From Lepidodermella squamata (taxonomy: Eukaryota > Animalia > Gastrotricha), in NCBI GenBank assembly GCA_047495785.1, contig JBLDXI010000017.1:744001-808000 (forward strand): a DNA stretch of 64,000 nt. Direction: 5' to 3'. The position numbers and the translations under genes were made by a program. The first letter of the stretch is position 1; each line of letters opens with the position of its first letter. A model generated the notes under the pieces. The model saw only the letters and a list, made by a program, of their open reading frames with translations. It searched no databases and was not told the DNA's origin. Shown here in pieces: positions 13,773 to 60,201 of the stretch.

Positions 13773-16700
13773 ATGATAAGGGCGGAACGTAACGTCGATG
13801 TTGTCATCAATTTTCCAACCTTCGAATCGGGCATCTACAACGAAAATGGCGAACTTCAGCGGTACATTCACGCCGGCAGTGGCCAGAAGGCGGTCGAGGT
13901 GGATGAAGATCATTTCCACAACGAATCAAACGTCTGCGCCGCTTTGCTGTCAGACGACGGCGAGTTGTGCAGTGAAAAGGGGCTCATTTTACCGTTTTGG
14001 GAGCCGACCGATGGCGGTACTAGATTTTTGATAATTTTCGTCTACCTGCTCGCGTTCGCTTACATCTTCATCGGAGTTTCGCTGCTCAGCGGCCGCGTTA
14101 TGATGGCGGTTGAAGTTATCACGTCGAAGTTGAAGGTTGTCTCCATGATTCGGGATAGGAATGGCAAGTTGAAGCCGGTTCAAAAGCCGATATGGTCGGA
14201 TGTTGTCAAAAACTTAACCCTGTACGTCCTCGGCTTTTCAGCGCCTGAAATTCTCATAACACTCGTTGAAATCGCGAAACACGACTTTGAAAAGGTGAGT
14301 GAAAAATTCAGAAAAATCCTTATTTTTTTTATATTATAAATTTTGAAATGGGTTAAAGCAAAGAACGGTGAGTTGAATTGGGTTGATTTTTTTCTATTCA
14401 CTTTGACTGCTGTGGGAATTTTTTTTCACAAAATCGCTTTTCGAACACTTGATTTCGGGGTGTTAATTTTGTTGCTCACCTTTAATAAGCCTTTCGTCCC
14501 TTTTTCGAATTTTAGGCTGATTTAGGTCCGGAGACGATTGTCGGCAGTCGCGCTTACCATTTATTCGTTATTACGGCAATATGCATTGTTTCGGTGCCGC
14601 GGAATGAGGTCAAGCGAGTTCGCCGATTGCGCGTCTACATCATTACGTCATTTTGGTCAATTTTCGCGTATCTTTGGATTTATCTCATCATTGCGCTATC
14701 AAGCCGGGAAATTATCGAGATTTGGGGTAAGATATTTTTATACTCCTCAACAGCATTACATTTCGAGTGAATATTTGATTTATTTCCCGTATTTGATCAA
14801 TATATATTTGATATATATTTCCGATAGTTATAGCTTCACGGGCTACTACAATTTCAACATTGAAATTTAAATGGAAACATTTGAAAATTAGTTTTTGGGG
14901 AAACCCTGGGCTAGAAGCTCTTTCAAAGTGGCTTCCTTGACCTCTTGTATCGGGAAAATCACTGATTTGTAAGATCGATACCTTGAATCGATATCAGATC
15001 TGCAGGCTGAAGTACAGCGTGCCCATAATTTGTGCACCATTTTGTAATTTCGAAATTTTTTAAGGAAATTCAACTAATTTTTTGAATTTTTGCCCACTCG
15101 GGGAATCGGGAATCTTCCATCCTTTATCCACGATTTTACCGAAGAAATTGAAAATTTACCGGAGAATACTCTGAATTCCCCGATTGTAACTGGTTCGGTA
15201 ATTTTCGGTTTTTACCTGGTTAGATCAAATTCCTTCGGATTTTTGTAATCCGATCCACAAGGGACATGACTTCCCCTCTCATTTCAGAGGTTCTGATCCC
15301 TTTTCGCGACGATTCCTTTGTTTGCGTTACTTATGGGACACGCTGTATAATTCGAGGAGATCTATCGGTAAATAAAATGATCGAGATACTAAGGAAGACG
15401 TTAATATAGAAAAACCCACTTCTATTGGAGAAATTAAGGCCATTTTTGAATTTTTGAATTTTTTACCATTTAATTTCGATTTATTTTGTATTTTTCAGAG
15501 GCACTGCTAACATTTTCATTCTATCCCATCGTTGTAATAACGGCTTGGCTATTCGAGCGATTTAACATTTTCAAGAGAAGAAAAAGGCCACCGCCAACTA
15601 AGCGAACGAAAGCCTCCTTGACGCGGCAAAAAACCATCCGAAAACGAGTTGGAAACAGCCCGTCGCGAAGCAGCCGTTCGACGGTTCGAGGCCCCAGCCG
15701 CGGTTCAAGTTCTCACGTGTTCACGCAGGCTGATGGCAGTATTTCCATGAGCCAGCTACAACCGATGCAACAACAACAAATAGCTGGGCTGAATTTGATA
15801 GTCAATAGTTCGAGCTTCAATAGCACAAATAATCAATTGAGCCCGAATAACAACGGCTCGAGTTTGCCGCCCTTGCTTGCCGGTCAAGCGGATCCGTTGC
15901 TGTTGAAAGAGAACGCGTTTTTTCGCAACGGGAGTGCGGGCGACCTTCAGCAGTACCGCAGCAATGAAGACACCTTGGAAGATGGCTGCGAGAATACCGA
16001 TCACGAAGAGCACGATGACGAAAATACAGACGGGGATGAAGAGGCGGTTGCCTCGCCAGAAACGGTATGAAATATACAAATTAGGAATTTTTTAATTTAG
16101 GATTACATTTTAAAAAAATTAAAAATTTTTGAAAAATTTCAATTTTAATTTTTTAAATTAGGATTAAATTTTAATTTCATTTTATTTTTTTTTAAATTTA
16201 GGAACAAAAAGCAGCTCGTGAGCTGTTGTGGCTGAGGTTGAAAGCTTTGAAGGACCGATTTCCTGGCCGGTCCCAGATCGAGTTGGAAACAATGGCGGGT
16301 AAGTTGGCCTATTTCTATCGATCCCCAATCAGCTTCGAAAATTAGATGTTCACGTTGTTATCAAAAATTATAAAAAAACAATGTGTTTTGCTCAGTTATG
16401 GGTTCGTTTTATGAGCTCCCTTAGACAATTAGACCGTGTCAAACTTTTCACTATGCACTTATTTCTATTAGAATGTCAACTTATTAGGAACCCGGCATGT
16501 AGATTTCCACAGAATTATGGGGAGAAAATCGCTGAAAAGAATTCATGAAAAAATCTGCTTCAAAATAAGCCTTGAAACGCCAAATTTCCCAAGGATAATT
16601 TTATTTCCTTACTAGGGGAAAATGTAAGGTAATTGAAATTACTTTTAGGATCTCCTTAAAAATAGGTAGTTCTAGCCGCATTTCAAATTTCAAAATTTGT

Positions 16701-19700
16701 CGAATTTTAAAATTCGATATTACCAACTATAATTAATTCTATCAATAGCGACCTTTTTTGGTTCCTTTTTCTCGGCCTTATTCCTCCGGCTAAAATACCC
16801 CTTGAAGCACCGATGGAAATTGGGCCATAAAATCGAATTTTTTTGACCTGTAAACCTAATCAGACTCACGTTTTTTTGCCTGCAGAGATGAGCTATCTTC
16901 ATGAGATGCCGAAAAATCAATCCTACTATCGCATAATGACGACAAGGGCTTTCACTGGTGAAGGCGACGTGATAACTCGTGATAAAATTCGCGCTAAACT
17001 GGTATGTCCCAAAAATTGAAATTTTTCGTAAACAAAAAATGTCCCAATATAATTCTGCTTAAAATCGCTTAAATAAAAACCATTTTTTTTCTCGCAGCCT
17101 TTTCTATTAGTAGAAATTAGCAATATTTTTCCCCGTAAATTATTATTACCGGATGCCGCTTCCACTAAAAAATTGTTAATTGTGAAAACATGATCCTTAT
17201 AGCTAGTTGGCATTGCTGCTCCGGAGGTGAGTCTTGCATCGCGACTCTTACAAATAGTTCGTTTTGTTTATAGCTTTAATTTTCACACTGACAAAGCATG
17301 ATTTTTTAGTTGATTTAAAATCTAATTATTATCGCTTTCCACACGTGTATTATTATTATTATTAACAGCCTCAGCTTTTTAGCCGGTGATTTTCCTAGCT
17401 TCTTCTCTCTTAGTAGCTTAAAGGCGTCACGCACCGAGTGAAAATTCTACTAATTTTTTCATTCGATTTTAGTTTAAATTTAATTTGAATATTTTTCTGA
17501 TTTTGCAATGCTCGAAACTTATTTTTTCGGTTGCGTTAATTACAGGTTAAAGAGTCGAAGGTGATTGAGAAGCGAAGGCGGCTTCGAGTTGGCGAACAAC
17601 GCGTTTTTTTCTGCCCTTCGCATTACGTTGTAGTCGAATGTGAACCCTTCGTCGAGGTCAAGGTCATGCGCGAAGGCGCAATTTACCTCCCAATCGAAGT
17701 CTCTTACGAAACCTACGATGGTTAGTTTTAATTGAATTTTTGAATATTTCTTTAAAAATTTGAACAATTTAGGAACTGCTTCGGCTGGTGATGACTATAT
17801 AGCTACCTCAGGGAAACTCATTTTCGAAGCCAACGAAACTACGAAATCCATCGCTATACCTATAATCGACGATGAAGAGTACGAAGATGACGAGTATTTC
17901 TTCGTGAAAATCACCTCGGCCAACTACATCGAAGTGCCCGATGCTATTCCTGAAGAGGACGTTAATGCAGCTAGTTGTGTTGGCGGCGATAAGTCGCTGA
18001 AACCTTCACCGGCCCGGGCGGCTGTGAAAAGGGCGAAGAGTAGTGTTGGCAAGAGGCGCGTGATTGAAATCGGCCCGCAGACTGAGGCTTGCGTGACGAT
18101 TTTGGACGATGACCACTGCGGGGTGTTCACATTTCCAGGCGCTAGCATCGTAGTTCCTGATAACTTAAAATACGTAAGGAAATTTATCTTAAAAGTTTCA
18201 AAATTGGAAAATTGATATTACCAATGACAGTAGAACATTTTTTGAAATTTTGAGATTAAATTTGGTCTTACTAATTTTTTGAAATTTTTGAAATTTAAAA
18301 ATTTAAATTATACGAATCAGAAAAAATTCGAAATTTTAAATGTAGGCCAATTGATTTTATTAGGAAACCAGACTGGATTTTTCAGCAAAACCTTAAATTT
18401 GCATTTTCTTCCTAATTAAGGCGGAGGTAAAGGTCATGAGAACAATGGGCGCTCATGGTCGAATTGTCGTGCCCTTCGAGTTGACCCCGGTGAATGCGAT
18501 ACTCGACCGCGACTACCAAGAACCAACGACTTACTCTATCACATTCGAACACCGCGAATTAGAGTAAATTTCCGCCAATTCTCCTATTTTTTTCCAATTT
18601 TTATTCACCGAATTTTTAGAAAAACAATAAAAGTAGGAATTATCGATAGACAACGCGCCGGTGATGACTCGATATTCACTCTAAGATTGCTGACCCCTAA
18701 CTTGATCGATGGTAATTTTTTGAAAATTTCATAAAATTTCATTAAAATTCCACAATTTTTATAGAAGAGCCACCCGATCGGTCTGAAGGGTTGCCGCGCA
18801 TTGGCGATCAGCCGCTGATAAAAGTGATAATTACCGAAAGTGATGAGATGAAAGAAACGCTCGATCGGTTGCAAACCGTCGGCGAGTTGGGCAATTTATT
18901 TCGAACAACTTGGCGCTCGCAATTCATCGATGCAATAACGCTGCAAACTACGTCATTCGTACAGCAAGACGATGGCGCCGTTTTGGGCGCCAACCGACAG
19001 CCTCAGTGGTACGAATACGTCCTACATGCCCTAACATTGCCTTGGAAAGTGGCCTTTGCCCTCCTACCTCCTACAGGTAAATTTAAATAATTTTCAAAAA
19101 ATTTCAAAATTTTCAATTAAATTATAGGATATATAGTTATAGGACTTCTTTGTGCAATAAATTGAATTTTCAATTTTTTTTTAGGATTACTCGATGGCTG
19201 GCTGACATTTTTGTCCTGCATCGTTGTAGTCGGCTTTATATCGATACTCATCGAAGACCTTAGCGCTCATTTCGGCTGCGTTTGCGGCATAGCCAAGCCT
19301 ATAACTGCCATCACGATAGTCGCTATCGGCACCTCACTACCGGACATGTTCGCATCTAGGGCAGCTGCTGTGCACGAAAAAACCGCCGACGCAGCTCTGG
19401 CACACATTTCAGGCTCTAATGCCGTCAACGTCTACCTCGGTCTCGGTCTCGCTTGGACGGTCGCCTCGCTACATCATCGCTACTGGAAAGGCGCGACTGA
19501 ATACAGACCCACTGTAAGTTCAATATCAGTGGCGAATTTTCTTAATTTATTTGTTCCTAAATTTCAAAAATTTCAAAAATTAAAAAATTTTCAAAAAATT
19601 TCCAGAAATTTCAATAAATTTCAAAATAATTTTATTAAATTTGTTTAACGGGGTATTTTTTAAATTTTCTAATTTTTTGTATTTTTCAAGTGCTTCCCTC

Positions 19701-19918
19701 AACATTTGGCTGCCAACGTGCTCTTATTTTTCGCCTTCTCCATCGCCGGTCTTGCCGTTCTGATTTTTCGCCGCTTCACCCACATGTCCGGTCGAGCGGA
19801 ACTGGGCGGCCCGTTGCCAATGCGACTACTCACCGCCGGCATTCTAGTCCTGCTCTACGTCATCTACATCACTCTCACGATTCTAGTCAACGAAAACATC
19901 ATCAACATCGACGTTTGA
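13773..19918 (+). CDS. NCX/SLC8-like exchanger copy 1 (most divergent, about 13 exons, start uncertain)
   Basis: NLTLYVLGFSAPE; LGPETIVGSRAYHLF (exon 14516-14726); Calx-beta IIDDEEYEDDE and ILDDDHCG; alpha-2 GTSLPD..AHISGSNAVNV; ELGGP. Exons join in frame at the GT-AG sites checked. Confidence 0.88.
14947..15014 (-). repeat. Dispersed repeat fragment, reverse complement of ~2727-2795
   Basis: gtatcgggaaaatcactgatttgtaa...ctgcaggctgaagta versus tacttcagcctgcag...ttacaaatcagtgattttcccgatac. Confidence 0.75.
15015..15345. mobile_element. Complete Tc1/mariner-type MITE in an intron of NCX copy 1
   Basis: TA|CAGCGTGCCCATAA ... TTATGGGACACGCTG|TA, i.e. TIRs plus TA duplication. Inverted relative to the copy at 801-1168. 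Confidence 0.85.
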
Positions 19919-20617: not shown

Positions 20618-22225
20618 ATGGAAGCGTTATCGAGCTCTGAAACCGAAATTTCCGACCATTTTAACGCCAGTTTCAACAACGCCAGCTCGGCCCAGATTGA
20701 GTCTCATTTCAACCTAACGAATTCCCATGAAGAAAACGGCCATGAAACCAGCAGTTCTAGCCATGGTCATCATCAAGTTGGACATGCGAATAATCATTCA
20801 AGCGATAATTACTGCTCGTTATCGCATCATATAATATGCACGAATGGTAAAATTATACCGCTGTGGCAACCGAATCCTATCACCCAATCTGGGCCTGTTC
20901 GAGCTGGCCGGTCGATTGTGCTAATGCTGGGTATGACGTGGCTGTTTTTCGGCGTCTCCGTTATTTCGGATAAATTTGTCGAAGCTATCGAAGTTGTCGT
21001 GTCGCAGAAGAAAAAAGTCCGCGTTGTTTCGCGCGTTACCGGACTCGAGGAGTACCATTACATTCCGATTTGGAACGAAACTGTCGCGCATGTAAGCATT
21101 TAATACAGGATTATGAGACATGACCCAATTTGGGACATAAGCTGTTTCCCTTTCGCACACTATTTTAAATCTCTTTTTACTTTAATTTTGAATTTTTTCA
21201 TAATTTTCCGATGACCCAGTTTCGGACAAAACTTTTCCGGTTATTTTTTGAAGGTTTTAATTTCTGTGAATTTTTAATTTTTTTTCAATTTTTTTGTTGA
21301 CTGGAAAGGGGATTTTTTAGATTTTTTAATTAAATTTTAATTTCATTTAAAAAAAATATGTTACCGTTTTCTAGCTTGCTCTTGCCGTAGTTGGCTCTTG
21401 CTCACCTGAAATTCTGCTAACAACGGTCGAAGTTCTGGCTCATAATTTCGACCTGGGCGAATTAGGACCGGCAACTATTGTCGGATCCGGTGCTTATAAC
21501 CTGTTCATAATTACCGCAATTTGTATCCTGTCGGTCAAAAAAGGCGAATCACGCAAAATCGAAGATATGCACGTATTTTTCGTCACAGGCAAGCCGTCGC
21601 GATTAATTCAAAATCTTAAATTTCAAATTTTTTTATAAAGGTGCTTGGGCAATATTTGCCTATATATGGCTGTATCTTATGATCTCTGTCATTTCTGTCG
21701 GCATTGTCGAAGTTTGGGAAGCACTTCTCACCCTGGCTTTCTTCCCACTGACCATTATTACTAGTTACCTGGCTAATAAACGCTGTTTTGGCTTGCGCGA
21801 GAAACTGAGACGAACAAATCAATCAGTTCACCCGGTTAACGAAACCCCAGATGGCAATAATGGGGAAAATTGTGATAATTCGGCCGAGACTCAAAATGGC
21901 AATTTAGCGAATGGAAACGGGGTGACTGGTGATCATCAAAATCATGACAACGGCAGCTTGGCGCATCAAGCTAACGGGAAAGCTAATCCGGCGACGGCGT
22001 CTGCTATACACATTGCGACCCATTTGAGATTTTTGACGAACAAATCAGCGCGAAATAGAGCGAATAGCAGAAAAATGGCGAATCGCCTGGAGCTTCAGAA
22101 ACAAAATGGTGACGCGCCAACTGAACAAACAGGTAAATTGATTGCTTTAATCCATATTTTGGTATTAAAAATAAAATAAAATAAAAAATAAAAAAAAATA
22201 AAAAGTGTCGCTCCTGGGTGGGCTC

Positions 22226-22265
<40 letters not shown>

Positions 22266-24739
22266 AATTGCGCCACAGAAGCACTTGAGAAAAGTAGATA
22301 GCACTTAAAACAAGTACTCACGCGTTGACAAAGCTGCATTTAGCCTTTTCTTATCAATTCACCTGTGAGCTAAGTGTTGCATACCGCATCAAAAGCTATA
22401 CCTCTAAGTTAGGAATAAAGAGCAGCGCGAAAATGGGAAATAATTGCACAATTTTGCGCAACATTCATATCATTTTCGTTATTGGAACTACCGAAGAATG
22501 CGGATGTAAGATTATTTTGATTTTTGTCAGCTGCAAATTATAAAGCAATTAACGAGTCAAATTGGAAATCAATTTCTTTTGGCCCAGTAAAATGTTGCTA
22601 TACTCTGTTATTAGGAATGTCTTAAATCTCTACTATTATATTCATAGGTAACAGCCTGCCAGTTGTTCAAAGCCCTGCTTTCAACACTGAAGACTACAAC
22701 GAATCAGGAGATGAAGACCGCACCGAAACCGCCCGGCGAATGATTGAGTCTCGAGAGCAAAATTTCCTCAGCATCGAAGCTGATTTGCGTAAACGTTACC
22801 CGGAAAAATCAAGCGCTGAAATCTACGAAATGGCCGAGATGGAACTAATTAAAAAAATCCCGAAATCCCGCGCATATTACCGAAGCCAAACCATGCGTCG
22901 CTTAGCCGGTTCTGAGGATGTTATCACGCAGAAAAAATTGAGGCAAACGATATCGCGAGCTCTTCAGAAAGTTAACGACCCAACTGCGGCGAGTTCGAAA
23001 ACTGTCTCACCACCGGACCCGACTAAACAAACCGTTTATTTCGACCCTTGCATTTACACGGTCGTTGAAGACGTTGGTAAATTTTCGTTAACTGTTGTCC
23101 GCGATGGGTTGGATTTGGATAACGAAATCTCAGTGGGTTACTCGACTCAAGACGGTACCGGCAAAGCTGGTATCGACTACAAACGCGTCGAGGGTCGTCT
23201 GAAGTTCTTACCTGGTGAATCGAAGAAATCGATCGAAGTAGAGGTGATTGACGATGAGGTGTTCAATGAAGACACGGTGTTTTATGTTAATTTGACCGAG
23301 CCTACGGTTCTGAGTAAAGGCATGGTTGCGGCTGCTTTACAACAAAATATGGGCGTGGCAACTGCGGTTCCGCTTCAGGTACGACTCGGACCTAATAGCC
23401 GGGCGATTGTGACAAAACTGGACGACGACCATGGCGGAATATTTCACGTAAGAGAAACTATTAAAAAGGTTTAGTGTTTTTTCATTTTTTCCACTTAGTT
23501 TGAGTCCGATTCGATGACAATAGAGGAAAGTGTTGGAGAAGCTTCTATCAAGGTCATTCGAAGCGCTGGTGGTAAAGGAGCTGTCACCGTGCCGCTAAGA
23601 ATCAAACCCGTCACTGCTCTAGCTAACCAGCAATACGTCGATCCCGGCCTTGTTGAAATCAAATTCGACAGCCGGGTAACAGAGGGTGTCTTCAAACTGA
23701 AAGTCATCGACGAGGGGAAGCTGAACAAACACGTATTGCTGCACTTGATCCTGGAAGAACCCAGCTGGTCGCAGCTACAACAGGATGATTTGAAAGATTT
23801 GGCTCGACTGGGCAAACCGCGGCTCAAACCGCCGATCTCTTTAGCAATTACAATAACCGAAAGCTCAAAATTGAAGCAGATAGTCGATGATTTAGCAAAT
23901 ATGGATGTTTATGCTAATTTCGTGGCGACAACAACTTGGCGGGAGCAATTTAAAGCTGCTATTACAGTTTCGGGCGGGGCCGAGAATGGCCATGAAAACG
24001 GAGAAGTAGCCAGTACGGTCAAGCCCAAGTGGTACGACTACGTTCTGCATGTTATCGCTTTCTTCTGGAAAGTCCTCATTGCCTTTGTTCCTCCTTCAGG
24101 TTAGTGTAAAATTATTTCATCATTCAGCCAGTTATGATTATTTCTTTCTTAGCTCTATGGCATGGCTGGCCAGCTGCTTTCTGCTGTTTAATCCTTATGG
24201 GCTTTACAACAGCCGTCATAGCAGACCTTGCTAATCAACTCGGTTGCACGATGGGCCTTCACGAAGACCTAACTGCTATAACCTTCGTATCTCTCGGCAC
24301 CAGCTTACCCGATCTATTCGCCTCGAGAATTGCCGCGAAAAACGAAGAAACTGCCGATGCAGCAATTGGTCATATATCCGGCGCATCGGCCATCAACGTG
24401 TTCTTCGGCATTGGGTTCGCTTGGTCGATCGCTGCCATCAAAAACTGGTCGGATGGCCGTAAACTTGTGATAAAGCCCGGCTCGCTGGGCTTCAGCGTTA
24501 CGCTCTACTTTTCATTCGCCTTTCTTGCAATTATGACGCTTATGCTTCGCCGATTGCCGCCTATCAATGGCGAACTAGGCGGGCCTACCTTCTTCCGATA
24601 TCTCACTTTCGGAGTCTTTATCACATTTTGGGTGATATACGGTGAGTCAGTCGAAATTTCGTTAATATTTTCAAAAGCACTTATATTTTTAGTTGGCCTA
24701 ACTGCATTGGATCAATATTGCGCCATTACGACGTTTTGA
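20618..24739 (+). CDS. NCX/SLC8-like exchanger copy 2 (multi-exon)
   Basis: IWNETVAH|LALAVVGSCSPE; KSRAYYR; VIDDEVFNED; KLDDDHGG; GTSLPD..GHISGASAINV; GELGGP. Confidence 0.92.
22209..22282 (-). tRNA. tRNA-Asn (GTT), antisense within an intron of NCX copy 2
   Basis: Reverse complement GCTTCTGTGGCGCAATTGGTTAGCGCGTTCGGCTGTTAACCGAAAGGTTGGTGGTTCGAGCCCACCCAGGAGCG folds as a cloverleaf with A/B boxes. A T-run terminator follows. Confidence 0.97.
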
Positions 24740-28200: not shown

Positions 28201-28339
28201 GCGTCTGAAGCCGGTTCACGGTGAACTCGGCGGCCCTGTAGTTATCCGAACGTTAACCGTAGTGTTTTTTGGTCTTCTATGGCTTGTTTACGTTATTTTA
28301 TCTGCTTTGGATAATTATTGTATAATCGTGACATTTTGA
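25260..28339 (+). CDS. NCX/SLC8-like exchanger copy 3
   Basis: VAHLTLLVLGSCAPE; GPGTIVGAGAYN; two Calx-beta domains; GTSLPD..GHVNGAVAVNV; GELGGP. Confidence 0.93.
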
Positions 28340-28517
28340 CGTGAGAAATTATAATGAATAAAACTGAGCAGATCGAACCTGTGATTTCCGGAAATGTTCT
28401 TTTTCTCAAGACTTCCGGCTGAGCTACGTTCCTTGGCGACATGGAATAACAAACGGAAAACAAATCTTTCTCAGCTATGAACTCGTGCTAATTCTGAAAA
28501 TAAGTCTATATGTTAGA

Positions 28518-31145: not shown

Positions 31146-31418
31146 GCAATTAAATTTTCTTTTGTATTTTGTGATATGATTCATTCGTACTGGCTTTTGG
31201 CATAATAATGTTGTCAACACAGTTTAGTTTGTAAAATTGATTTTACACAGGTCAGACTTACGCGGTGTTCGCAAAGCCCCTAGGGAAATGCATCCACGGA
31301 GACCGTTTATCGCTATTCGCGATTTTATTACAACGATGGAAAAATCGATTTTAAAACCTTGCTGCGATTTCAAAGCTGATAGCTGAAAGCTGTCTAAGGC
31401 TGGTTCGAGAAAGGCTCA

Positions 31419-34103: not shown

Positions 34104-34570
34104 ATTTCGTGCTAATGGTTACATATATATATGAGAATTTAGACGTGTTTACTTTCAATCGATATTTAATGGTATATAATAAAACATGTCTCGAAATTTG
34201 TCCAAATCTCAAATTTAGGAATGTGGGTCTCACGTTGCTAAGCAATAGCAGCATATAACATAGCAATTACACGTGCCTGTAAATTATCGTTGCCCGGCGA
34301 GGTAATGTATCGATACATCATTGCCATGGCGTGTCGCAGCTCTCGCTCTCGAGCATGAAAAAGGTTTCCCTTCCGATTTAGCCACTCGTGCTGCAGCGCC
34401 GCCCAGGGGAAATGACGTATAACACATGTTGGCTTATAGAGCTGCATAGCGAATTCATTTATTTCTATCAGAAAAAAATCTAGAATTTCAGTCGATATGT
34501 CCAATTAAACCATTTATATATATGCTTTTCATGTTCAAAATTCAACCCATGGCGTGAAACGCTGGTGGCC

Positions 34571-46007: not shown

Positions 46008-49000
46008 ATGGGAGTTCAAGAACATCCAGTTGAAGACCATGGGGGTGGAGATCACGGTGATGATCACGGAGATGGCGGAAATTCGACAGGAGAATGCTCG
46101 CCCATCCTAAAAAAATGCACCCATCCCCATTTCCTTCCAGAATGGCAACCAAGTCCTCTGACGCTACCCATAGAAATGCGAGCGGCTCGAGCTGCTATTC
46201 TGTTCGTCAGCCTTTTCTACATCTTTGTCGGTCTTTCATTCATATCAGATAAGTTCAACTCAGCAATCGACGTCATCGTTTCGAGAAAACGAAAAGTCAA
46301 AGTCGTTTCTCGAGTGACTAATACAGAGCAATACGTGAACATCCCTATATGGAACGAATCAGTCGCGCATCTGACTCTGTTCGTTCTGGGCAATTCAGCT
46401 CCGGAAATTCTCCTCTCCGTTATCGAGACGATAATGGGCGGTTTCAAAATCGGCGAACTAGCTCCGATGGTCATTCTAGGCAGCCAATTCAACCTTTTTG
46501 TAACAGGAGGAATCTGCATTCTGGCCGCTTGTCCAAAAGCGAAGAAACAGCACGAACTGCGAAATTTCTTCGTCACGAGTGAGTCCCATTTTAGCCCAGT
46601 GTTCAAGAGTAATTATCGAATTTGTTGAATTCATCTTTCAGCCGGGTCAGGAATAATTGCATACGGCTGGCTGTATGCTGTTCTCAGCGTTATCACTCCT
46701 GGAATAGTCGAGCCCTGGGAGGCCATTCTTACACTATCGTTCTTTCCGGTAACAAGTAAGGCTGAAGTTTTTGATTTTTTTGAGAATTTTTATGATCTCT
46801 GTCTATTTCAAAGTTGTTGTCGCTTACATTGTGGATCGTGAGTTTTTCGGGGCTTTCAAACGGCTGAAGAGACGATATGGGAGCAGACGAGTCGCTGCTG
46901 TGAATAACGAGGTGACCGACCTTACTTCCCACTCTGGCGCGAGTAGATCAACCGATGACTCCGTTGCCATTGAGCTGGGTCGCGATATATCAGTTGTAGA
47001 GGATGACGATCTTACTGAGGTGGAGGCTGCAAGGATCGCCATGGAGAAGCGACAGACTCACTATTTGGCCCTGGTCAAAGAGCTCAGGGTTAAACATCCA
47101 AATTTAACATCAGCGAAAATCAACGAAATGGCTGAGCTGCAAATTATCGACGAAATGCCCAAGACTATGGGTTACTACCGCATGTTGGCATCGAAAGGAA
47201 TGTCTGGCAATGAAAGCATCATAAACATGGACAAACTTCACGCAGCTTTTGAGGTAATATGAGTATTTAAGTACCTGAAATTCAATATAACTCAACGATT
47301 TTCAGCCTTTGGTCCAAAAACGGGTCTTAAAACCCGGCCAGCAAGTTATTTCGTTTGACCCTTGTGAATATCGCGTCATGGAGGATTGTGGCACAATGGA
47401 ATGCAACGTCATTCGGGAAGCTCTGTCAGATAAAACTCTAAAATCAACTGTTCAAGTGAATTATGCAACAAAAGATGGTTTGTTTTCACTTGATAGCTGA
47501 AAGCTGATTTGAGCTCATTATTTACAGGAACCGGGGTATCCGGCAGTGATTACGTGGCAAAAAAGGGAACTTTGATATTCAAGCCCGGCGAGAAGCTGAA
47601 GAAGATTCCCATTAAAATCATTGACGATGACGAATTCAACTTGGATACCCAGTTCTACGTTGAACTATCCGCGCCAATGATCACAACCGGGAAGAGTCCA
47701 AAGCCGACATCATCGCCTGACGTCATAATCGACCCTGATCTCAAGAAGGCAACTATAACAAAAATTGACGACGACCATGCTGGTATTTTCTGCTTTGAGC
47801 ATCCTGAATTATCTTTCGAAGAAGATTGCGGCGAAGCTAAAATCAAAATCGTGAGGAATTCCGGGGCAAAGGGTGTAGTCACCCTACCCTACAAGATCAT
47901 ACCGGAAACGGCAATCCCAAAAGTCCACTTCACTGAGGTCGGCCTGCCTCAAGCAAACAACAAACAAACGACTCAAAGTCAAGTGATAAAATTTCAGGGT
48001 AAACAAACTGAGTAAGTACTTTTTTGCTTGAAATAATGGCGCCATAACCTCGTTGCTCTTTCAAGGCACATTCTGCGTTTCAAACTTGTCAACGAAGGTA
48101 GCTTCTCAAAGAAGGCAATATTCCGCATCGAACTAAGCCCACCAGTCGAGGGCAATGCTAACAATTGGTCCAGCTTGATGAAAACTGTCAGCAAGAATCC
48201 GAAACAGCCACCCACAAAGGAAACCTCCAAAGCAGAGAAAGCTCGACTGGGAGAAGTATCCAGTGTTCGCGTTACAATAACTGAAAATCAAAAACTGAAA
48301 TCTGTTGTCGATCGCATCTCAAGCTTGGACGTAAACGATTTCATCGGCTCATCATCATGGGGACAACAGTTTGTAGACGCTGTCACAGTTCGGCATGATG
48401 CCCATGTCGAAGAGGAGCAAGAAGAAGAGGAAGAACAGGGTGAGAGTTCAGCCCCCGCTAAGCCCAGCAAAGCTGAATACTGCAAGATGTATTTCTTCCA
48501 CATAATCACGTTTTTCTGGAAGATCCTTTTCGCATTCATCCCGCCAACTGGAATGGCCGGCGGATGGGTTACATTCTTCTCTTCTCTGATTTTGGTAGGC
48601 GGTATGATGGCTTTAGCCGCAGATATCGCTATCCAACTCGGCTGCACGATTGGTTTGAAAATCGAAATGACAGCTATTACATTAGTTGCGTTTGGTGTTA
48701 GCCTGCCTGATATATTCGCTAGTAGATTAGCTGCGGTTAAGGAGGAACATGCTGATGCTGCTCTTGGCCATATGATGGGCCGTATTGGTGTCAGCATTTA
48801 CGTAGGATTTGGTCTCAGTTGGACGCTGGCGTCTATCAAACAAGCACTGTCCGGGAACGTGCTGAAAATCCCGGTTAAAGAACTACCTTTCAATATTATT
48901 CTCTTTTTCATATTTGTGGGCGTAGCAGTTTTTGTTTTGCTGATTCGACGACTGCCACCGGTTCGTGGTGAACTCGGTGGGCCGAAACCTGCAGCAATAG

Positions 49001-49089
49001 CGACAGGTGTCTTATTCTTTTCGTTATGGGTGCTTTATATAACACTGACAGCACTTGAGAGCTATTGTGTTCTGAATGTTTCTTTCTAG
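46008..49089 (+). CDS. NCX/SLC8-like exchanger copy 9 (strongly altered ion site)
   Basis: VAHLTLFVLGNSAPE; APMVILGSQFNLF; Calx-beta pair; GVSLPD..GHMMGRIGVSIY. Confidence 0.92.
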
Positions 49090-49835: not shown

Positions 49836-52800
49836 ATGGGCGGCGGATCAGCTGCAACAGCTGGTAACGGCACTGTATCGTGTGCAACTATCACTTGCAG
49901 CCATTCAGAGTTTATACCGCAATGGATGCCTTACCCCAACCAAATCTCTGTCGGGGAACGAGTTGGAAGAGCCATCGTATATATCCTCATACTCGCTTAT
50001 CTTTTCATCGGAATGTCAATGGTATCAGACACATTCTGCGCAGCAATCGACCACATCATCACACGGAAGAGGAAGGTGAAAATCACATCTCGACTAACTG
50101 GATCTGTCCAATATGTGCAAATACCCATTTGGAACGAAACAGTGGCTCATCTAACCTTGTTTGTATTGGGCAATGTCGCTCCAGATATCCTACTCACCTT
50201 AATCGAGGTGATACTCAACGACTTTGATCCCGGACATCTTGGTCCTTCTGTGATTATCGGAACCGGTGCGCTTAATCTTTTCTTCATACAAACGGTATGC
50301 ATATGCGTGGTTGAAAAGAATCATGCGAAAAAAGTGGAACACATGCGATTGTACTTCCTAACTAGTAAGTCCCACTTAAATTTCATACTGTGTTTATGAC
50401 CTATTATTTTTTAGCCGGTTGGTTTTTGTTCGGCTATCTATGGCTATATTTTATTTTGGTCCCAATTTCAAATGGAATAATCGAGCCATGGGAATCCTTT
50501 CTGACCCTGTGCTATTTCCCGATGCTCGTCGTCTCTGCATATATTGTCGACCGCAATTTTTTCGGCTGCTGTGCTCGACTGAAGCGGCGAGCTATTAGGA
50601 CAATTTCCCCTTCTCTAAGTAAAGCTACAACAAACGTTTCTGTGATACCCATGCCTGCGCAATCAGTCTCGGATTCAACCACTGAGGTTACAACAGAAGG
50701 ACTGGAAACCCACATGGATCATGAGGATGAATTCGAAGCAGCCCGACAGGTCAGCTATCTTTTTTCTCCCTAGGAATGCTCTTTAAACGTTTTTAATCAA
50801 AATAGGCTTTAGAGAAAAGACAGCATCGCTTCTTGGCACTTCTCAAAGAGATGCGGGCGAAACACCCGAATAAAACTCAGCAGCAAATTCAGGAATTAGC
50901 CGAGCGCGAGCTTATTAAAGAGCTCCCGAAGAGCCCTGGCTATTATCGAATGTTGGCTTCAAAAGGCTTATCAGGTGGTGGTGATATTATCAACAAGGAA
51001 AAACTCAGAATGAAATTTGACGTAAGTCAATTTGGATGGGGGTCAAATTTGTGTCTAATTCCAGGATATCGATTTATAGATAAATAAGAAAAAAGACGTT
51101 CGACTGAGTGACCCAGCAGCTCAGGTCCTGACATGCGACCCTGCCGAATATATCGTGATGGAGGATTGTGGGTCATTCCAAGCAAATGTGACCAGGCTTG
51201 GTAACAACCTGGACAACGTAGTGTCAGTGGATTACGAAACCGAGGACGGCACTGGTGTTGCTGGGAGTGACTATGAAACCGTTAGAGGACGCCTGATATT
51301 CAAAAATGGGGAACACACCAAGCATGTGACAATCAAAATTATCGACGACGATGTATTCAATCTGGATACCGTTTTTTATTTGAAACTTTCCAATCCAGTC
51401 CTAGTTGATCCTGGACCTCACAAAAAACTCGTAATTTCGAGGTTCCGTGTTTCATTCCTAATATTCTTTTATATTACAGATCCCGAAACTATCACTCGAC
51501 CCTGAGGGCAGTAAAGCGAAGATAACAAAAGTTGACGACGACCATGGCGGAATTTTTCACTTCCAGAAGTCAAAAGTCACAATAGAAGAGGATGTTGGTG
51601 TAGCTGCGTTTCATGTTACTCGAAGTTCAGGAGCTAAGGGCTGCGTTGCTGTCCCATTCCATATAGAAGCCGCATCAGCCCAACCCGGTATTCACTTCAT
51701 TCCACCCTCGTCGAACCTAATAATATTCCAAAATCGAGAGACTGAGTAATTTCACCATATCCCTCTTAATCATTGTTAACATTATTCCCTTTCAGAAAAT
51801 TATTGAAGATGAAAGTTATCAATGAAGACCGTCTCGTGAAAAAGGTTCAGTTTGAAATAGAACTGGAGGAACCCTATTTCTATGAGGGCAAATTGGAGCA
51901 GAGCAATGGCTTCCCCCATAAAGCAAAGTTAACAAAACAACAATCAGAACAGTCTGCCGAAGAAAAAATCGAGACAAAAAACCTTGGAAAACCGAAACTT
52001 GGCGAGGACTCGAAAGTCGTTGTGACTATCACAGAGAACACTGGACTTCGAAATGCTGTCGATAACATAGCGAATATCGACCTGAACGATTTAGTGGGTG
52101 CTGTTTCTTGGAAGGCGCAGATTAAGGAGGCTATCGCTCTACCAACTCAGGCCCTTAACGATGAAGATGGAGATGGCGATGTCGACGAAGATGATGCAGT
52201 TGTTAGGAAAACACCATGGAAAGTCTATATATTCCACTATCTAACTCTCTTCTGGAAAATTCTCTTCGCCCTCATCCCTCCGACATGTAAGATTGATCTA
52301 TAAAATATCGCAATTCTCATTAAGAATTTTTGAAATTTTAGATATGCTTGGTGGCTGGTTCTCATTTTTCTGGGCCTTTGGTTACATTGGTGTAATCGTT
52401 GCAATAATTGCCGATATTTCCAAGCAATTGGGCTGTGTCCTTGGCTTGAAAGATGAAATTACAGCTATCACGCTTGTCTCATTTGGCACTAGCTTGCCTG
52501 ATCTTTTCGCAAGTATCCTCGCCGCGAAACGGGAGGAACACGCCGATTCAGCTATTGGTCACGTTAATGGGTCGTGTGGCGTCCTCGTCTTTCTCGGCAT
52601 CGGCATCAGCTGGACGGTGTGCTCGGTGAAAAAAGCCATCGATGGCAAAGAGCTGCGCGTTCAACTGCGTGGTTTTACGTTTTCCATCACAATTTTCCTT
52701 ATATTCGCGCTTCTTACAATCGCTGTGCTTCTGTTCCGCCGACGGCCAGCTGTCGGCGGTGAACTGGGCGGGCCGACGTTCTACCGCGTGTTAACCGGCG

Positions 52801-52880
52801 TTTTCTTCATGTTCTTATGGTTCACTTACGTCTTGTTGAGTGCGTTGTCAAGTTACTGCATAATCAATCCGCTATTTTAA
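49836..52880 (+). CDS. NCX/SLC8-like exchanger copy 10
   Basis: VAHLTLFVLGNVAPD; IIDDDVFNLD; GTSLPD..GHVNGSCGVLVF. Confidence 0.92.
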
Positions 52881-53533: not shown

Positions 53534-56500
53534 ATGACCGGAGATTCTCATGGGTAATTTTTGACGAAATATAAATATCAAGTAACATAGTTGTCATCTT
53601 TAACGTCAGAGTCCACTCTTCAGAAACAGCTGAGCATGAAAGCTCCGGTGGCTGTGGCGCTGTCGGTTGCAGCCACACTGAATTCATACCGAATTGGAAC
53701 CCTTCGGCTTATCTCCTGTCGACCGAGGAACGCGTCGGCCGCGCAGTGGTCTACATCACAGTTCTTGCCTACTTATTTCTCGGAATGTCGTTAGTTTCTG
53801 ACAAATTCTGCGCTGCAATTGACCGAATTATCACGCAGAAGCGAAGAGTCAAGATCACATCGAGACTTACAGGAAGCGTGGAGTATGTTCAAATTCCTGT
53901 TTGGAATGAAGCTGTAGCTCATTTGAGCTTGTTCGTTCTGAGCAATGTTGCTCCAGATATTCTGTTATCACTCATTGAAGTTATTACTAATGATTTCAAT
54001 GCTGGAAAATTAGGACCTGAGATCGTCATCGGCTCTGGAGCTATCAACTTGTTCCTAATCCAAACGGTTTGCATTCTTGTCGTTGAGCCGAACAAAGCTA
54101 AACGAGTAGAACATCGAAGGCTCTACTTCCTAACAGGTGATTTGGTTGTAATGAATTCTCAATAGATTAGCATGTTTTTCCCACAGCTGGTTGGTTTCTC
54201 TTCGGATACCTATGGCTATACCTCATCCTGGGACAAATATCTCCTGGAGTGATAGAGCCTTGGGAATCTCTAGTCACCCTATCATATTTCCCACTGCTTG
54301 GTAAGTGGCTGTTTAGAGTGGACTATGTATTCCCTAATCTTTGAATTTTCCAAGTAATTACTGCTTACATCGTTGATCGAAATTTCTTCGGTCTCTGCAA
54401 ACGGCTTCAAGCTAGGTCCGGTGCAGTGAGCCCAGAATCTCACCGCAGTCAGTCAGAAATACAGACAGAAGACCTTGACCACGAGGACGAACTTGAGATC
54501 GCGCGGCGAACCCTTGAACAGCGCCAACTCCGCTTCATCGAGTTAATGAAGGATATGCGGAAAAATCATCCTAATAAAACTCAGCAGCAAATACAAGAGC
54601 TAGCTGAGCAAGAAGTCATCAATGAAATGCCGAAATCACCGGGTTATTATCGAATGCTTGCTTCGAAAGGATTATCAGGAGGTGGGGATGTTATAAACAA
54701 AGAAAAGCTCCGCATGAAATTTGAGGTAAGTAATAATCAGCCAATGCCATAACCACATTAATTTGATCGGCTTAAAAGATGAACAAGGTGAGCGACTCAC
54801 GTTTCAGCGACCCTTCAGTTCAAATAATCGCTTTCGACCCGGCTGAGTACATTGTTATGGAGGACTGTGGATCATTCAACGCTCACGTTACACGGCAAGG
54901 AAAAAATCTCGATAACGTTGTCGCGGTGGACTACTCAACCGAAGACGGTAAGAAAAACCGAATTGCTGAGTCGAAGTCACCAGGCCTTTACATCTCCGCT
55001 AGGTACTGGAATTGCGGGCAGTGATTACGAGGCAGCTAGCGGGCAGTTGTTTTTTGAAAAAGGAGAATCGTTGAAACATATCACGATCAAAATCATTGAC
55101 GACGATTTTTTCAACGTTGATACGGTCTTCTATTTAAAGCTGTCTAATCCTACTGTTGTTGACTCAGGTGTTAACAAGAAAATTGTGAGTTGCACTTTCC
55201 AGCTTTGCATTTATCTAACACTTACTTCAAAATCTAGACACCATGGGTTTCGCTAGACAAAGAAGCAATGAAAGCTAGAATTGTTAAAGTGGATGACGAT
55301 ACGGGTGGTATTTTCAAGTTCCCAAAGCCTACCATGGTAATTGAAGAACATGTCGGAACGGCTGTTTTAAAAATTTCCAGAAATTCTGGTGCCAAAGGGA
55401 CGGTAGCTGTTCCTTTCAAAATTATACCAGGTACGGCTCTGCCGGGCGAGCATTTTCTACCCCCACGCGAAACTGAAATCGTCTTCGAACACAGGCAGAC
55501 TGAGTAAGCCTTGCCATCACTATAAGCACATTAAAGTTGGCCTATTTACATTTAGGAATTCCATTCATGTCGGAATTATTAATGAAGATAAACTGGCCAA
55601 AAAAGTTGAATTCGCCATCGAGCTGGGAGAGCCTTACTTCTTAGAAACAGGCATTGTTCAGAAAGTTAAAGAAGGTGCGTTGCGTAATCGTCAAGCTAGA
55701 GGCGGAGATAAGGTTATTGACGTGAAAAACCTTGGCAAACCGAAACTGGGAGATGAGCCTAAGCTTATGGTTACCATCTCTGAAAACAGCAATCTTCGAC
55801 ACGCCGTAGATAACATTGCGAACATTGACATGAATGAACTAGTAGGGGCTGTTTCTTGGAAGGCGCAATTTATTGAGGCAGTCACACTTCCTAAAGCGAC
55901 AGTGAATACAGATGAGGACGACGATAGTTCGGCAAGCAAGCGGCCTCCAATCAAGGCCTACATCTTTCACTTTTTAACCCTTTTCTGGAAAGTTGCTTTT
56001 GCCTTCATCCCTCCGACACGTAAGTCCTGTCTAAACAAATTAACACTCTTCTTATCACATATTTATTTTAGACATTTTGAAAGGTTGGGCTTCTTTCCTC
56101 GTTGCCTTCATTTTCATCGGAGTTATAATTGCTATTATCGCCGATATTTCAAAGCAGCTTGGATGCTGCTTAGGCCTACGTGATGAAATCACTGCAATCA
56201 CTCTCGTCTCATTCGGAACCGGCTTGCCTGATTTATTCGCTAGCATTTTAGCCGCAAAGCGGGAAGAAACAGCCGACGAGGCTATAGGTCACGTCAATGG
56301 ATCCTGCGCAGTTTTGGTTTTTCTCGGTATCGGTTTGAGCTGGACAGTTTGTTCGTTCAAGCACGCCATCGACGGCAACGAGATGAGGATACAACTACGA
56401 GGCTTTTCGTTCTCAATAACGGTTTTCTTGACCTTCGCCGTTTTAGCTATAATAGTTCTACAGCTGCGACGGCTTGCGCCAGTTAACGGCGAATTGGGAG

Positions 56501-56610
56501 GATCCACACTGTTTCGCATAATTACGGCGATTTTCTTTGTATCGCTTTGGGTTATTTACGTCACTCTGAGTGCACTTTCAAACAATTGCACCATAAATCC
56601 ACCGTTTTAG
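53534..56610 (+). CDS. NCX/SLC8-like exchanger copy 11 (short first exon MTGDSHG)
   Basis: ATG 53534 splices in frame to VHSSETAEHES..CGAVGCSHTEFIPNW; VAHLSLFVLSNVAPD; GTGLPD..GHVNGSCAVLVF. Confidence 0.9.
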
Positions 56611-57195: not shown

Positions 57196-60100
57196 ATGGC
57201 TGGCGATTACTATGAGGGGCTCAGAGAAGAAGTCCAGCCAACGAAAAGCCAACGGTATGAGAATGCCACATCGGAACCATCCGTTTACCCAGAATCTCGA
57301 GGTGACATTCACAGCCATACCGATAGTCACGATTTCAACGTTTCAAGCTACAATCACAGCTCAAAAACGAGTCACAGTGAACATGACCATTGCTCTGTTA
57401 CTGGCGATTGTGAAGCCGGTCTATTGATCCCAAGCTGGCAGCCTCCTCCTAATCAGATATCAGTAGAAGAGCGAGCTGGTCGAGCTATTCTTTACATAAT
57501 TTGCATGGCCTACCTTTTTCTAGGCGTCTCAATCGTCGCCGATAAATTTGTTACTGCTATCGAAGTTATCGTCTCGAAGACACGAAAAGTAGAGGTCGTC
57601 TCCAGGACGACTGGTCGGAAAACGTATGTTCGGATCCCTATCTGGAATGAAACTGTAGCACATCTGACGTTATTTGTCTTGGGTAACTGCGCTCCTGAAA
57701 TTCTGCTGACAGCTATCGAAGTAATAAATCGTGATTTCAAGGAAGGCGAACTTGGGCCAGGTTTTTCCCTAAGAGCGCATTTGAGAAAATTATTCATTTT
57801 TCAATTTACAGGAGCTATCATCGGATCTGGCGCTTACAACTTGCTAGTAATAACTGGAATATGCTGTCTATCTGTTCCACAAGGCCGAGTTTTGCGACTG
57901 CATGAACTGAGAATCTTCTTTGTAACCGGTAATAAGCCCGCAAAGCTCCAGCTAATCAATTAATTTTGTGAATTAAACATTTCTAGCTGCATGGATGATT
58001 TTCGCTTATCTATGGGTCTACATTATAACAATAGTTTCCACGAAGGGAGTCGTAGAAGTTTGGGAGGCAGTTACAACGCTGTTTTTCTTTCCGCTATGCG
58101 TTACATCCGCCTACGTAGCAGACAAGCGATGTTTTGGAATTTTCAAACGAAATCGAGTCGCTCCTGACGCTGAAACTGATGTTGAAAAGGCTCAAAGTGC
58201 CTTGGAAATTCGTGAACAGCGGTTTCTTTCTATTTTAGCCCAAGTGAAGAAGAAACATCCAAATCTGAGTATGGCAGAAAAGCGGGAGAGAGCAGAAATG
58301 GAGCTATTGAGAGAGGGCCCAAAGAATCTAAATTACTACAGAATGGAAGCCGGAAAACGAGTTGCTGGCGGCAGTGTAATCAATAGAGAAAAGCTTCGCG
58401 AAAAAATAGCGGTGAGTTAATATGATTGATCCTCCAAAGTCGGCCTTGAACTTCTCCTAGGCTGATGAAAATTCTCGAGACAAATTCAACGATCCATCCA
58501 TTCAAGAAATCGGATTCGATCCAACTGATTATTCTGTAATGGAGAATGCAGGAACGTTAATGCTTCACGTCGTCCGCCGAGGTGCTGATCTGAACAACTC
58601 CATCTCCGTAGACTTTAAAACCGTCGATGGGACAGGCAAAGCTGGCTTCGATTACTATCAGTCGGTGGGCACTCTAGTATTCAATAATAAAGAGTGTGGC
58701 AAATTGATTTCCATTAAAATCATTGACGATGACGAATTCAACATGGATACGCAATTCTACCTAGTTCTCGAAAATCCCAAACCGATAATTCCAAAAGGAG
58801 CATCACAGGCTGTAGCTGTAAGTTATGCATTCAAATTACAGGTTAATATTGTGTCTTGGATATAGGCCAAACTTAACGGATTGCAACTTCGAATCAAAGA
58901 TACAGGGACAGCAACGGTCAACAAACTAGATGATGATCAAGGTGGAATTTTTTCTTTCGATGCAGACGAAACTACCGTTGATGAAGGTTGTGGTTATGCA
59001 AACATTAGAATCACGAGAAGCGGTGGTGCAAAGGGAGACGTCTCCTTGCCTGTGAGTTTCTTGCCACTGACCGCCAAAAAGGGACTACATTACGACGATG
59101 CTGGAACTCAAAGCTTGCTATTTGTAAACGGCTGCGTTGAGTGAGTCTTCTAAAACTTGAAATTCAACCTTGGAGTTTTACATTGCTATAATCAGAAATA
59201 TTCTTCGGATCAAAATCATCGACGAAGGCTCGCTGAATTCAAAATCTGCGGTTCTCAACTTGCAGTTAGGCGAGCCCGAATGGGTAACCCCTGACAGCGA
59301 GCATGTTGGAGCCAAGCTGCGCAAAAGACGCTCCACGGCAGACATGGGAACTTCGAAACTGGGAAAGCCCCGTCTTGGGGATATCAAGTCTATTAAAATA
59401 ACAATAACTGAGGACCCTGAATTAGGAAGAGCAGTTGCTGATTTAGCAAACACCGAGCTGGGCAGTCTCGTCGGCTCTGCATCTTGGGCGGGGCAATTTC
59501 GAGAGGCGGTCACTCTACCAAAAATCGAAACCTGCGATGAAGTTGAGGAGATTGAAAATGGTAACAAATCCCGCTCTTCGTCAGGAGTGAAATGCCGCAA
59601 TGTTCTTCACTTCTTGACATTATTTTGGAAAATTGTATTTGCCTTCATACCACCACCCAGTATCGGCCAAGGCTGGCCCGCGTTTTTCGGTTGTTTAGCT
59701 GCAATTGGTCTGCTAATAGCTTTAGTTGGGGATTTCGCCAGCTATCTAGGCTGCACTGTTGGCTTGAAAGATGAACTAACCGCTATCACTTTTGTATCTC
59801 TTGGCGCTAGCTTGCCGGACACTTTCGCCTCTAGAATAGCTGCTATGAAGGAAGACACAGCCGATGCAGCCATCGGGCATGTAACTGGCGCTTGTGCTGT
59901 CAATATTTTTCTCGGAATTGGCATAGCCTGGAGCTTGGGTGCGTTCTATCAAACGGCTGTGAATGGCGCTGATGGCCTTACGATAGAACCTGGCACCCTA
60001 TCTTTCAGCTTGACGCTGTTTTTCTCCCTCGCCTCTGCTGCTGTTATCATTCTTCTACTCAGGAGGTTACCTCCTGTACGTGGCGAGCTAGGGGGAAAAC

Positions 60101-60201
60101 AGCCCGTTCGTCTATTAACTACGCTAGTTTTGTGGTTTTTATGGATCTTGTACGTCGTGTTGTCTGCGTTAGACAGTTATTGCGTAATTCAAACTTTTTA
60201 G
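57196..60201 (+). CDS. NCX/SLC8-like exchanger copy 12
   Basis: VAHLTLFVLGNCAPE; IIDDDEFNMD; KLDDDQGG; GASLPD..GHVTGACAVNIF. Confidence 0.93.

What the first reader, a model, noticed from the sequence alone, without database searches (positions are those of the whole stretch)
13773..60201. Tandem array of 12 intact NCX-type exchanger genes
Seen: 12 co-oriented genes over ~46 kb, each with both alpha-repeats, two Calx-beta domains and an intact C-terminus; copies differ widely at synonymous sites. Known: well-studied animals carry only about 1-4 SLC8/NCX genes, not arrayed. Inference: an old lineage-specific expansion kept by selection, pointing to a specialised ion-handling function such as osmoregulation, mineralisation, metal handling or sensory cells. 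Subgroups are visible by eye: copies 4-8, copies 10-11, and the outliers 1 and 9.
Basis: partly seen in the sequence, partly recalled or inferred. Interest (0 to 1): 0.88.

Follow-up and report, generated by a model that had tools for sequence, protein, structure and literature searches.

The report
Exchanger array missing one sodium site
Twelve neighbouring, intact genes in a tiny invertebrate (probably a gastrotrich) descend from the sodium/calcium exchanger, but most have lost ligands of one of its three sodium-binding sites while all keep the calcium site, so they probably move calcium with a different partner ion or ratio, which nobody has measured.

Summary
Confirmed: 12 co-oriented NCX (SLC8)-derived genes at 13773-60201 give intact spliced frames of 840-1063 aa. 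Synonymous sites are saturated, omega is about 0.04, and copies 6 and 7 appear spliced in a probable RNA run. A Cys-loop channel gene interrupts the array. The array is not one clade: copy 1 and copies 2-12 belong to two old subfamilies, both also arrayed in a distant relative and sister to its canonical NCX. Copies 2-12 keep the Ca2+ carboxylates and mostly the outer Na+ site. They have replaced ligands of the inner Na+ site (S110 to Cys/Val in 10 of 11; S838 to Ala/Arg in 9 of 11), added two histidines, and altered the CBD Ca2+ sensors. Canonical NCX is 97-99% invariant at these positions. NCLX lacks the same two serines and is an H+/Ca2+ or non-selective exchanger. Best reading: Ca2+/cation exchangers no longer coupled 3Na:1Ca (0.55, untested). 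This scan had already noted sister arrays of this family 167-265 kb upstream. I found no paper on it. The host is probably Lepidodermella squamata (circumstantial).

The parts
13773..19918 (+). Copy 1, subfamily A; 1063 aa, 11 introns; keeps N101, S110, S838 equivalents and CBD1 acids; has S109F, N143H and His at the Mj-N232 position
   Evidence: start codon uncertain
20618..24739 (+). Copy 2, subfamily B; 1038 aa; orthologue of relative gene R1
22207..22283 (-). tRNA-Asn(GTT) inside intron 3 of copy 2 (passenger)
25260..28339 (+). Copy 3, subfamily B; 974 aa; orthologue of relative genes R2/R3; His-rich N-terminus; S139A in addition
28518..31145 (+). Copy 4, subfamily B, group 4-8; 840 aa
31419..34103 (+). 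Copy 5, group 4-8; 842 aa; Thr of the alpha2 motif replaced by Ala
   Evidence: only sparse RNA contigs
34571..37269 (+). Copy 6, group 4-8; 842 aa; intron 36679-36730 spliced in run X2
37799..40672 (+). Copy 7, group 4-8; 850 aa; junction across intron 38280-38331 present in run X2
40826..42602 (+). Cys-loop ligand-gated ion channel-like gene inside the array (full model not completed)
   Evidence: Pfam Neur_chan_LBD and Neur_chan_memb above cut-off
42912..45547 (+). Copy 8, group 4-8; 842 aa; His101 codon 43266, Cys110 codon 43293, alpha2 His 45227, Ala at S838 position 45239
46008..49089 (+). Copy 9, group 9-11; 934 aa; Arg at the S838 position, one-residue deletion in TM3; candidate non-transporter
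49836..52880 (+). Copy 10, group 9-11; 908 aa; alpha1 GNVAPD (NCLX-like), Leu at N842 position
53534..56610 (+). Copy 11, group 9-11; 883 aa; alpha1 SNVAPD, alpha2 GTGLPD
57196..60201 (+). Copy 12, subfamily B; 914 aa; alpha1 GNCAPE, alpha2 GASLPD

Best explanation
The lineage's canonical NCX gene was duplicated long ago into a derived family (subfamilies A and B), which grew by tandem duplication and was kept by purifying selection (shown). Subfamily B (copies 2-12) keeps the 10-helix alternating-access fold and the central Ca2+ site (Glu/Asp113, Asp of alpha2). Most copies also keep the outer Na+ site, but the hydroxyl ligands of the inner Na+ site Sint are lost (shown at sequence level). 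I infer that these proteins still exchange Ca2+ across a membrane but no longer at 3Na+:1Ca2+. The likely modes are 2 cations per Ca2+ (electroneutral) or NCLX-like H+ / non-selective cation exchange, with the two new cytosol-side histidines possibly acting as proton or pH sites (inferred). Loss of CBD1 E451/E454, R532K, loss of CBD2 acids and a degenerate XIP suggest weaker Ca2+ activation and no Na+-dependent inactivation (inferred). Several pocket variants (2, 3, 4-8, 9, 10-11, 12) imply different tuning per copy. Ca2+ handling independent of a Na+ gradient would suit a minute freshwater animal (speculative).
For: Sint ligands are A47, T50, S51, E213, S236 and Sext ligands A206, T209, S210, E54, S77 (PMC5133943). 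In copies 2-12: A47V 11/11, S51 to C/V 10/11, S236 to A/R 9/11, T50-position G/N 8/11. E54 is acidic 11/11, D213 11/11, S77 9/11, S210 10/11, T209 8/11. In 144 background NCX these sites are 97-99% invariant. Only 11 of 106 near-invariant columns are switched in subfamily B, and three are Sint ligands (p 0.008, post hoc). The new residues use varied synonymous codons and are shared with the relative's R1/R2. NCLX lacks S51, S236 and S77 yet transports Ca2+, as H+/Ca2+ (PMC12571890) or with Na+, K+, Li+ or possibly H+ (PMC13483046). AlphaFold of the relative's R3 (pLDDT 85) matches human NCX1 over the full length. Omega is 0.03-0.04.
Against: No transport measurement exists. S51 is one of six side chains essential for transport in NCX_Mj single mutants (PMC8366772), so loss could mean little or no transport. 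Cys may partly replace Ser. Unlike NCLX, the outer Na+ site is mostly kept, so pure H+ coupling is not implied. Replacing ion ligands in NCX_Mj did not reproduce other properties of mammalian NCX (PMC9820601), so residue tables predict imperfectly. The positions of the two histidines relative to the pocket were not measured (no coordinates available).
Confidence: 0.55

Rival explanations
1. Transition-metal or Mg2+ / H+ exchangers, an animal parallel of plant MHX: Cys110 and the two new His provide soft ligands, and the His-rich N-termini gather metal.
For: S110C in 8/11, N101H in 11/11, and alpha2 His in 12/12. N-termini are 9-14% His in 9 of copies 2-12 versus 1-3% in the rest of the protein, with no signal-peptide-like hydrophobic stretch. 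MHX arose from NCX and exchanges H+ for Mg2+, Zn2+ and Cd2+ (PMC3679957).
Against: The two-carboxylate Ca2+ site is intact. The relative's R3 lacks both His and R2 lacks one, and copies 5 and 10 have few N-terminal His. Geometry of a Cys/His cluster was not shown.
Confidence: 0.17
2. Non-transporting or uncoupled proteins: ion or pH sensors, scaffolds, or passive Ca2+ uniporters. Most plausible for copy 9 (Arg in the pocket) and copies 10-11.
For: S51 is essential in NCX_Mj. A positive charge placed in the NCLX pocket suppressed transport (S468K), and copy 9 has Arg at the S236 position. Large tandem families are often sensory, and a Cys-loop channel gene sits in the array.
Against: Both carboxylates, both helix-breaking prolines and the pocket glycines stay almost invariant in all copies. 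The changes are concentrated on one site instead of spread as decay.
Confidence: 0.14
3. Ordinary 3Na+:1Ca2+ exchangers with retuned affinity; the expansion serves dosage or cell-type-specific expression.
For: Fold, both CBDs, the Ca2+ site and the outer Na+ site are retained, and backbone carbonyls of A47 and S236 positions remain available.
Against: Two or three Sint hydroxyls are lost at sites that are 97-99% invariant across eukaryotic NCX. A canonical NCX is retained separately in the relative.
Confidence: 0.12
4. Assembly artefact or decaying pseudogenes.
For: The probable source genome was made from amplified single-animal DNA (PMC11660948). RNA support was checked only for copies 5-7.
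Against: Nucleotide identity is 65% or less, omega is 0.04, and all 12 frames are intact (about 55 stops expected per gene at 0.5 neutral substitutions per site). Spliced RNA contigs and syntenic orthologues exist.
Confidence: 0.02

Closest known systems
NCX / SLC8A1-4, Drosophila CALX (3Na+:1Ca2+ exchangers)
   Same: Same architecture (alpha1, alpha2, CBD1-CBD2); about 35-40% identity; nested in the animal NCX clade, sister to the lineage's canonical NCX; Ca2+-site carboxylates kept.
   Different: Sint ligands replaced, His at N101 and Mj-N232 positions, CBD1 E451/E454 lost, R532K, CBD2 E580 lost, XIP degenerate, no evident signal peptide; 12 tandem copies (more nearby) versus 1-3 genes in studied invertebrates and up to 7 in teleosts.
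NCLX / CCX (SLC8B1)
   Same: Loss of the same two Sint serines with the Ca2+ site kept; copies 10-11 approach the GNG(A/S)PD alpha1 motif (Asn50, Asp54).
   Different: NCLX has no CBDs, also lacks S77, and has a different alpha2 motif. These genes descend from NCX, so the resemblance is convergent.
Plant MHX (Mg2+,Zn2+/H+ exchanger)
   Same: Precedent for an NCX offshoot that changed its ions.
   Different: Plant-restricted (PMC3679957); independent origin; no MHX sequence was compared directly here.
Caenorhabditis ncx-6 to ncx-10 expansion
   Same: Lineage-specific, partly tandem expansion of a Ca2+/cation antiporter in a small invertebrate (PMC4232491).
   Different: CCX/NCLX type, 4-5 genes; nematode NCX proper keep GSSAPE and number 2-3.

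Membership tests
NCX (SLC8A) | Two alpha-repeat halves in a 10-helix membrane domain | tested here: met
   Pfam Na_Ca_ex, alignment, hydropathy, model of relative R3 matches 8SGJ at E 1e-54
NCX (SLC8A) | Tandem Calx-beta domains CBD1-CBD2 (diagnostic versus CCX, PMC4232491) | tested here: met
NCX (SLC8A) | Phylogenetic placement within the animal NCX clade | tested here: met
   derived clade sister to relative's canonical NCX, 97/98; long branches are a caveat
NCX (SLC8A) | alpha1 consensus G(S/G)SAPE and full Sint ligand set | tested here: not met
   no copy has GSSAPE; S110 kept only in copies 1 and 9, S838 position only in 1, 10, 11
NCX (SLC8A) | alpha2 consensus GTS(I/V/L)PD | tested here: inconclusive
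   met in 8 of 12; altered in copies 5, 9, 11, 12
NCX (SLC8A) | CBD1 four-Ca2+ ligand set including E451, and R532 tether | tested here: not met
   E451 and E454 lost and R532 is Lys in copies 2-12; copy 1 keeps E451/E454 (roles in PMC9820601)
NCX (SLC8A) | 3Na+:1Ca2+ electrogenic exchange | not testable with these tools
   needs electrophysiology or flux assay
NCLX/CCX | No CBDs; GNG(A/S)PD and (G/S)(N/D)SxGD motifs | tested here: not met
   CBDs present; alpha2 is not CCX-type; alpha1 only resembles it in copies 10-11
NCLX/CCX (works-like) | S51 and S236 replaced with Ca2+ site kept | tested here: met
   both replaced in copies 2-8 and 12; S77 lost only in copy 3 (Thr in 10)
NCKX (SLC24) | Asp at the NCX_Mj D240 position | tested here: not met
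   Asn, Ser or Leu in all copies; NCKX differs from NCX_Mj only at T50 and E213
CAX | GNXXE repeats in both alpha regions | tested here: not met
   Gly at the matching position in copies 4, 6, 7, 8 but Cys, not Asn, follows; alpha2 NCX-like
MHX | Plant-restricted clade with MHX-specific residues | not tested
   no MHX sequence was retrieved; animal NCX ancestry argues against membership

The most novel reading that the evidence does not exclude
Gastrotrichs evolved from NCX a large family of Na+-independent, H+-coupled exchangers for Ca2+ or transition metals that still carry CBD sensors. This would be an animal counterpart of plant MHX and a convergent copy of NCLX chemistry, with each paralogue tuned to a different ion.
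Probability: 0.3. Interest if true: 0.87.

Novelty: new variant of a known kind. Interest (0 to 1): 0.68.

Why it matters
How Ca2+/cation antiporters set counter-ion and stoichiometry is an open question; even NCLX is disputed (H+ versus non-selective cations, PMC12571890 and PMC13483046). Single mutations of Sint in NCX_Mj mostly cripple transport. Here evolution supplies about six selection-maintained pocket variants on the NCX scaffold that lose mainly Sint ligands, with a canonical NCX from the same lineage as control. They allow a direct test of whether removing one Na+ site yields a 2:1 or H+-coupled exchanger. They also point to unusual ion physiology in a barely studied animal phylum.

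Tried and rejected
Assembly artefact, recent duplication and gene conversion: rejected (no long high-identity nucleotide match between copies). Pseudogenes: rejected. Single-clade origin of the 12 copies: rejected. Nematode host, my first guess from intron style: disfavoured because the relative carries a CFAP65/HYDIN-type motile-cilium gene (nematode absence is from my own knowledge) and nematode NCX branch elsewhere. Two JGI metagenome scans with alpha1 and alpha2 alignments found no further relatives. A symplekin search for the relative's taxonomy gave only 33-41% hits across animals. The relative's BioSample was in no paper, so its habitat is unknown and 'freshwater adaptation' could not be tested. 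A single-sequence AlphaFold run failed (pLDDT 38). Spliced window proteins could not be folded by reference and no coordinates are returned, so His/Cys geometry is untested. Literature searches for an NCX expansion in invertebrates or gastrotrichs found none, and the genome paper never mentions exchangers. Searches for NCX1 S110/N101 mutant data found nothing usable. The general excess of changes in the alpha repeats was not significant (p 0.06-0.2). Pairwise dN/dS is undefined because of saturation; the codon-model omega is only approximate.
Full report
Observation. A six-frame scan and Pfam show repeated Na_Ca_ex, Na_Ca_ex_C and Calx-beta pieces on the + strand from 13.7 to 60.2 kb. tblastn with a full-length intronless relative resolves 12 units. 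A spliced aligner needed no frameshift, and hand-refined models give intact proteins of 1063, 1038, 974, 840, 842, 842, 850, 842, 934, 908, 883 and 914 aa. There are 57 GT/GC-AG introns, several at positions shared by up to ten copies, as expected for tandem DNA duplication. Each gene has a poly(A) signal within 135 nt of its stop. A Cys-loop channel gene lies between copies 7 and 8, and a tRNA-Asn lies in an intron of copy 2.

Age and selection. Copies share 34-69% aa and 46-65% nt identity; pS is 0.71-0.82 and pN 0.20-0.47. A codon model gives omega 0.037 for all twelve and 0.031 for copies 4-8, 827 log-likelihood units better than omega=1 with kappa fixed at 2. Saturation makes the value approximate. 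DNA run X1 reproduces 31400-37300. Run X2 (RNA by guess) holds many contigs over copy 6, including a joint that skips exactly the predicted intron 36679-36730. It also holds a 30-nt end found only in the spliced copy 7.

Relatives and history. The best hit of copy 3 (54%) lies on ENA metagenome contigs with three tandem exchanger genes R1-R3. The representative search led to two more clusters in the same samples: seven tandem genes, and two derived genes beside a canonical NCX. A mixture-model tree (wider set) places all derived genes in one clade (100/98) sister to the relative's canonical NCX (97/98). Subfamily A holds copy 1 and the relative's other arrays. Subfamily B holds copies 2-12 and R1-R3 (100/100), with copy 2 = R1 and copy 3 = R2/R3 in the same gene order. 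Groups 4-8 and 9-(10,11) and copy 12 have no counterpart in the retrieved contigs. Holding the 12 window genes together is rejected (p-AU 1e-86). So both subfamilies predate the split of two species whose orthologues are 57-61% identical. Earlier notes of this scan report sister arrays and a canonical gene 167-265 kb upstream; I did not see that DNA.

Host. Earlier notes suggest the gastrotrich Lepidodermella squamata. Consistent but circumstantial: the genome paper reports 122 Mb, 157 contigs and 43% GC, sequenced together with C. elegans (PMC11660948). The window is about 42% GC, the scan lists 147 pieces, and the same-study run X3 has 100.6 million letters and no match. The relative is unidentified and its habitat unknown.

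The transport site. In NCX_Mj the inner Na+ site Sint uses A47, T50, S51, E213 and S236; the outer site Sext uses A206, T209, S210, E54 and S77; the Ca2+ site uses E54, E213 and two further residues, T50 and T209 (PMC5133943). In 144 background NCX-type proteins these positions are 97-99% invariant. Copies 2-12 show A47V in 11/11, S51 to Cys (8) or Val (2), S236 to Ala (8) or Arg (1), and Gly or Asn at T50 in 8. Both carboxylates are acidic in 11/11, and S77, S210 and T209 are kept in 9, 10 and 8. Asn101 and the Asn at Mj-232 become His in 11/11; the second His is also in copy 1 and several subfamily-A genes, so it probably arose on the stem of the family (inference). Of 106 near-invariant columns only 11 are switched in subfamily B, three of them Sint ligands (p 0.008, chosen after seeing the data). 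Copy 1 differs: S51 and S236 are kept, with T50F and N81H. Copies 10-11 have Asn50 and Asp54, as NCLX does. Copy 9 has Arg in the pocket.

Regulation. CBD1 keeps E385, D421, D446-447 and D499-500 but loses E451 and E454 in copies 2-12; R532 becomes Lys. E451 bridges several Ca2+ ions and R532 tethers the CBDs (PMC9820601). CBD2 loses E579, E580 and mostly D552. In NCX1, E579 and E580 help form the acidic pocket that receives the XIP lysine needed for Na+-dependent inactivation (PMC10897212), and XIP itself is degenerate. N-termini lack a hydrophobic signal stretch and are mostly His-rich. An AlphaFold model of R3 (pLDDT 85) matches human NCX1 across its length.

Mechanism. Shown: descent, intactness, selection, partial expression and residue changes. 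Inferred: function. [quoted passage not shown] By analogy I favour Ca2+ exchange with reduced or no Na+ coupling (0.55). Because Sext is largely kept, a two-cation electroneutral mode is as plausible as pure H+ coupling. Rivals are MHX-like metal/H+ exchange (0.17); non-transporting or uncoupled proteins (0.14), supported by the essential role of S51 in NCX_Mj and most likely for copy 9; ordinary 3:1 exchange (0.12); and artefact (0.02).

Known systems and novelty. By descent and architecture these are SLC8/NCX. By signature motif and Na+-site ligands they fail the canonical definition, and they are not NCLX, NCKX or CAX. Studied invertebrates have one to three NCX genes with conserved motifs (PMC2408596, PMC4232491). 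I found no paper on this family. Verdict: a real new variant of a known kind, already noticed by this scan at neighbouring clusters. This window adds the second subfamily with syntenic orthologues and the Sint-focused pattern. Interest 0.68.

Noticed in passing
window 40826-42602 +: Cys-loop ligand-gated channel-like gene inside the exchanger array, same strand; full spliced model not completed.
   Followed up: partly
His101 codons, e.g. window 43266, 25803, 57661: The new alpha1 His is encoded by CAT in all 11 subfamily-B copies and in R1, although His codons in these genes are 55% CAT (p about 0.0015, post hoc). Unexplained.
   Followed up: partly
window ~28700-28790 (copy 4): Loose ends in DNA run X1 match copy 4 with three differences, all synonymous: an allele or a further close copy.
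   Followed up: partly
window 3586-4437 -: Intronless IRG/IIGP-type GTPase ORF.
   Followed up: no
window 5185-6087 -: Reverse transcriptase fragment of a non-LTR element.
   Followed up: no
window 8872-10439 +: Secreted-looking, GC-rich gene with C-type-lectin-like domains (weak Pfam hit).
   Followed up: no
window 1349-2592; 324-488 and 6633-6797; 14933-15230: Inverted and dispersed repeats, probably non-autonomous transposons; one family also sits in intron 2 of copy 1.
   Followed up: no
   Followed up: no
L009 105-2802; L009 18532-21251: Two subfamily-A genes of the relative have lost the alpha2 carboxylate (His or Gly) yet keep open frames: candidate pseudo-exchangers.
   Followed up: partly
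L011 65-2542 (P0301): An unrelated NCX lineage independently shows His at the same alpha2 Asn and at N143, with Ser for E113.
   Followed up: partly
window 61600-62800 -: Gln/Pro-rich exons of an unidentified gene downstream of the array.
   Followed up: no
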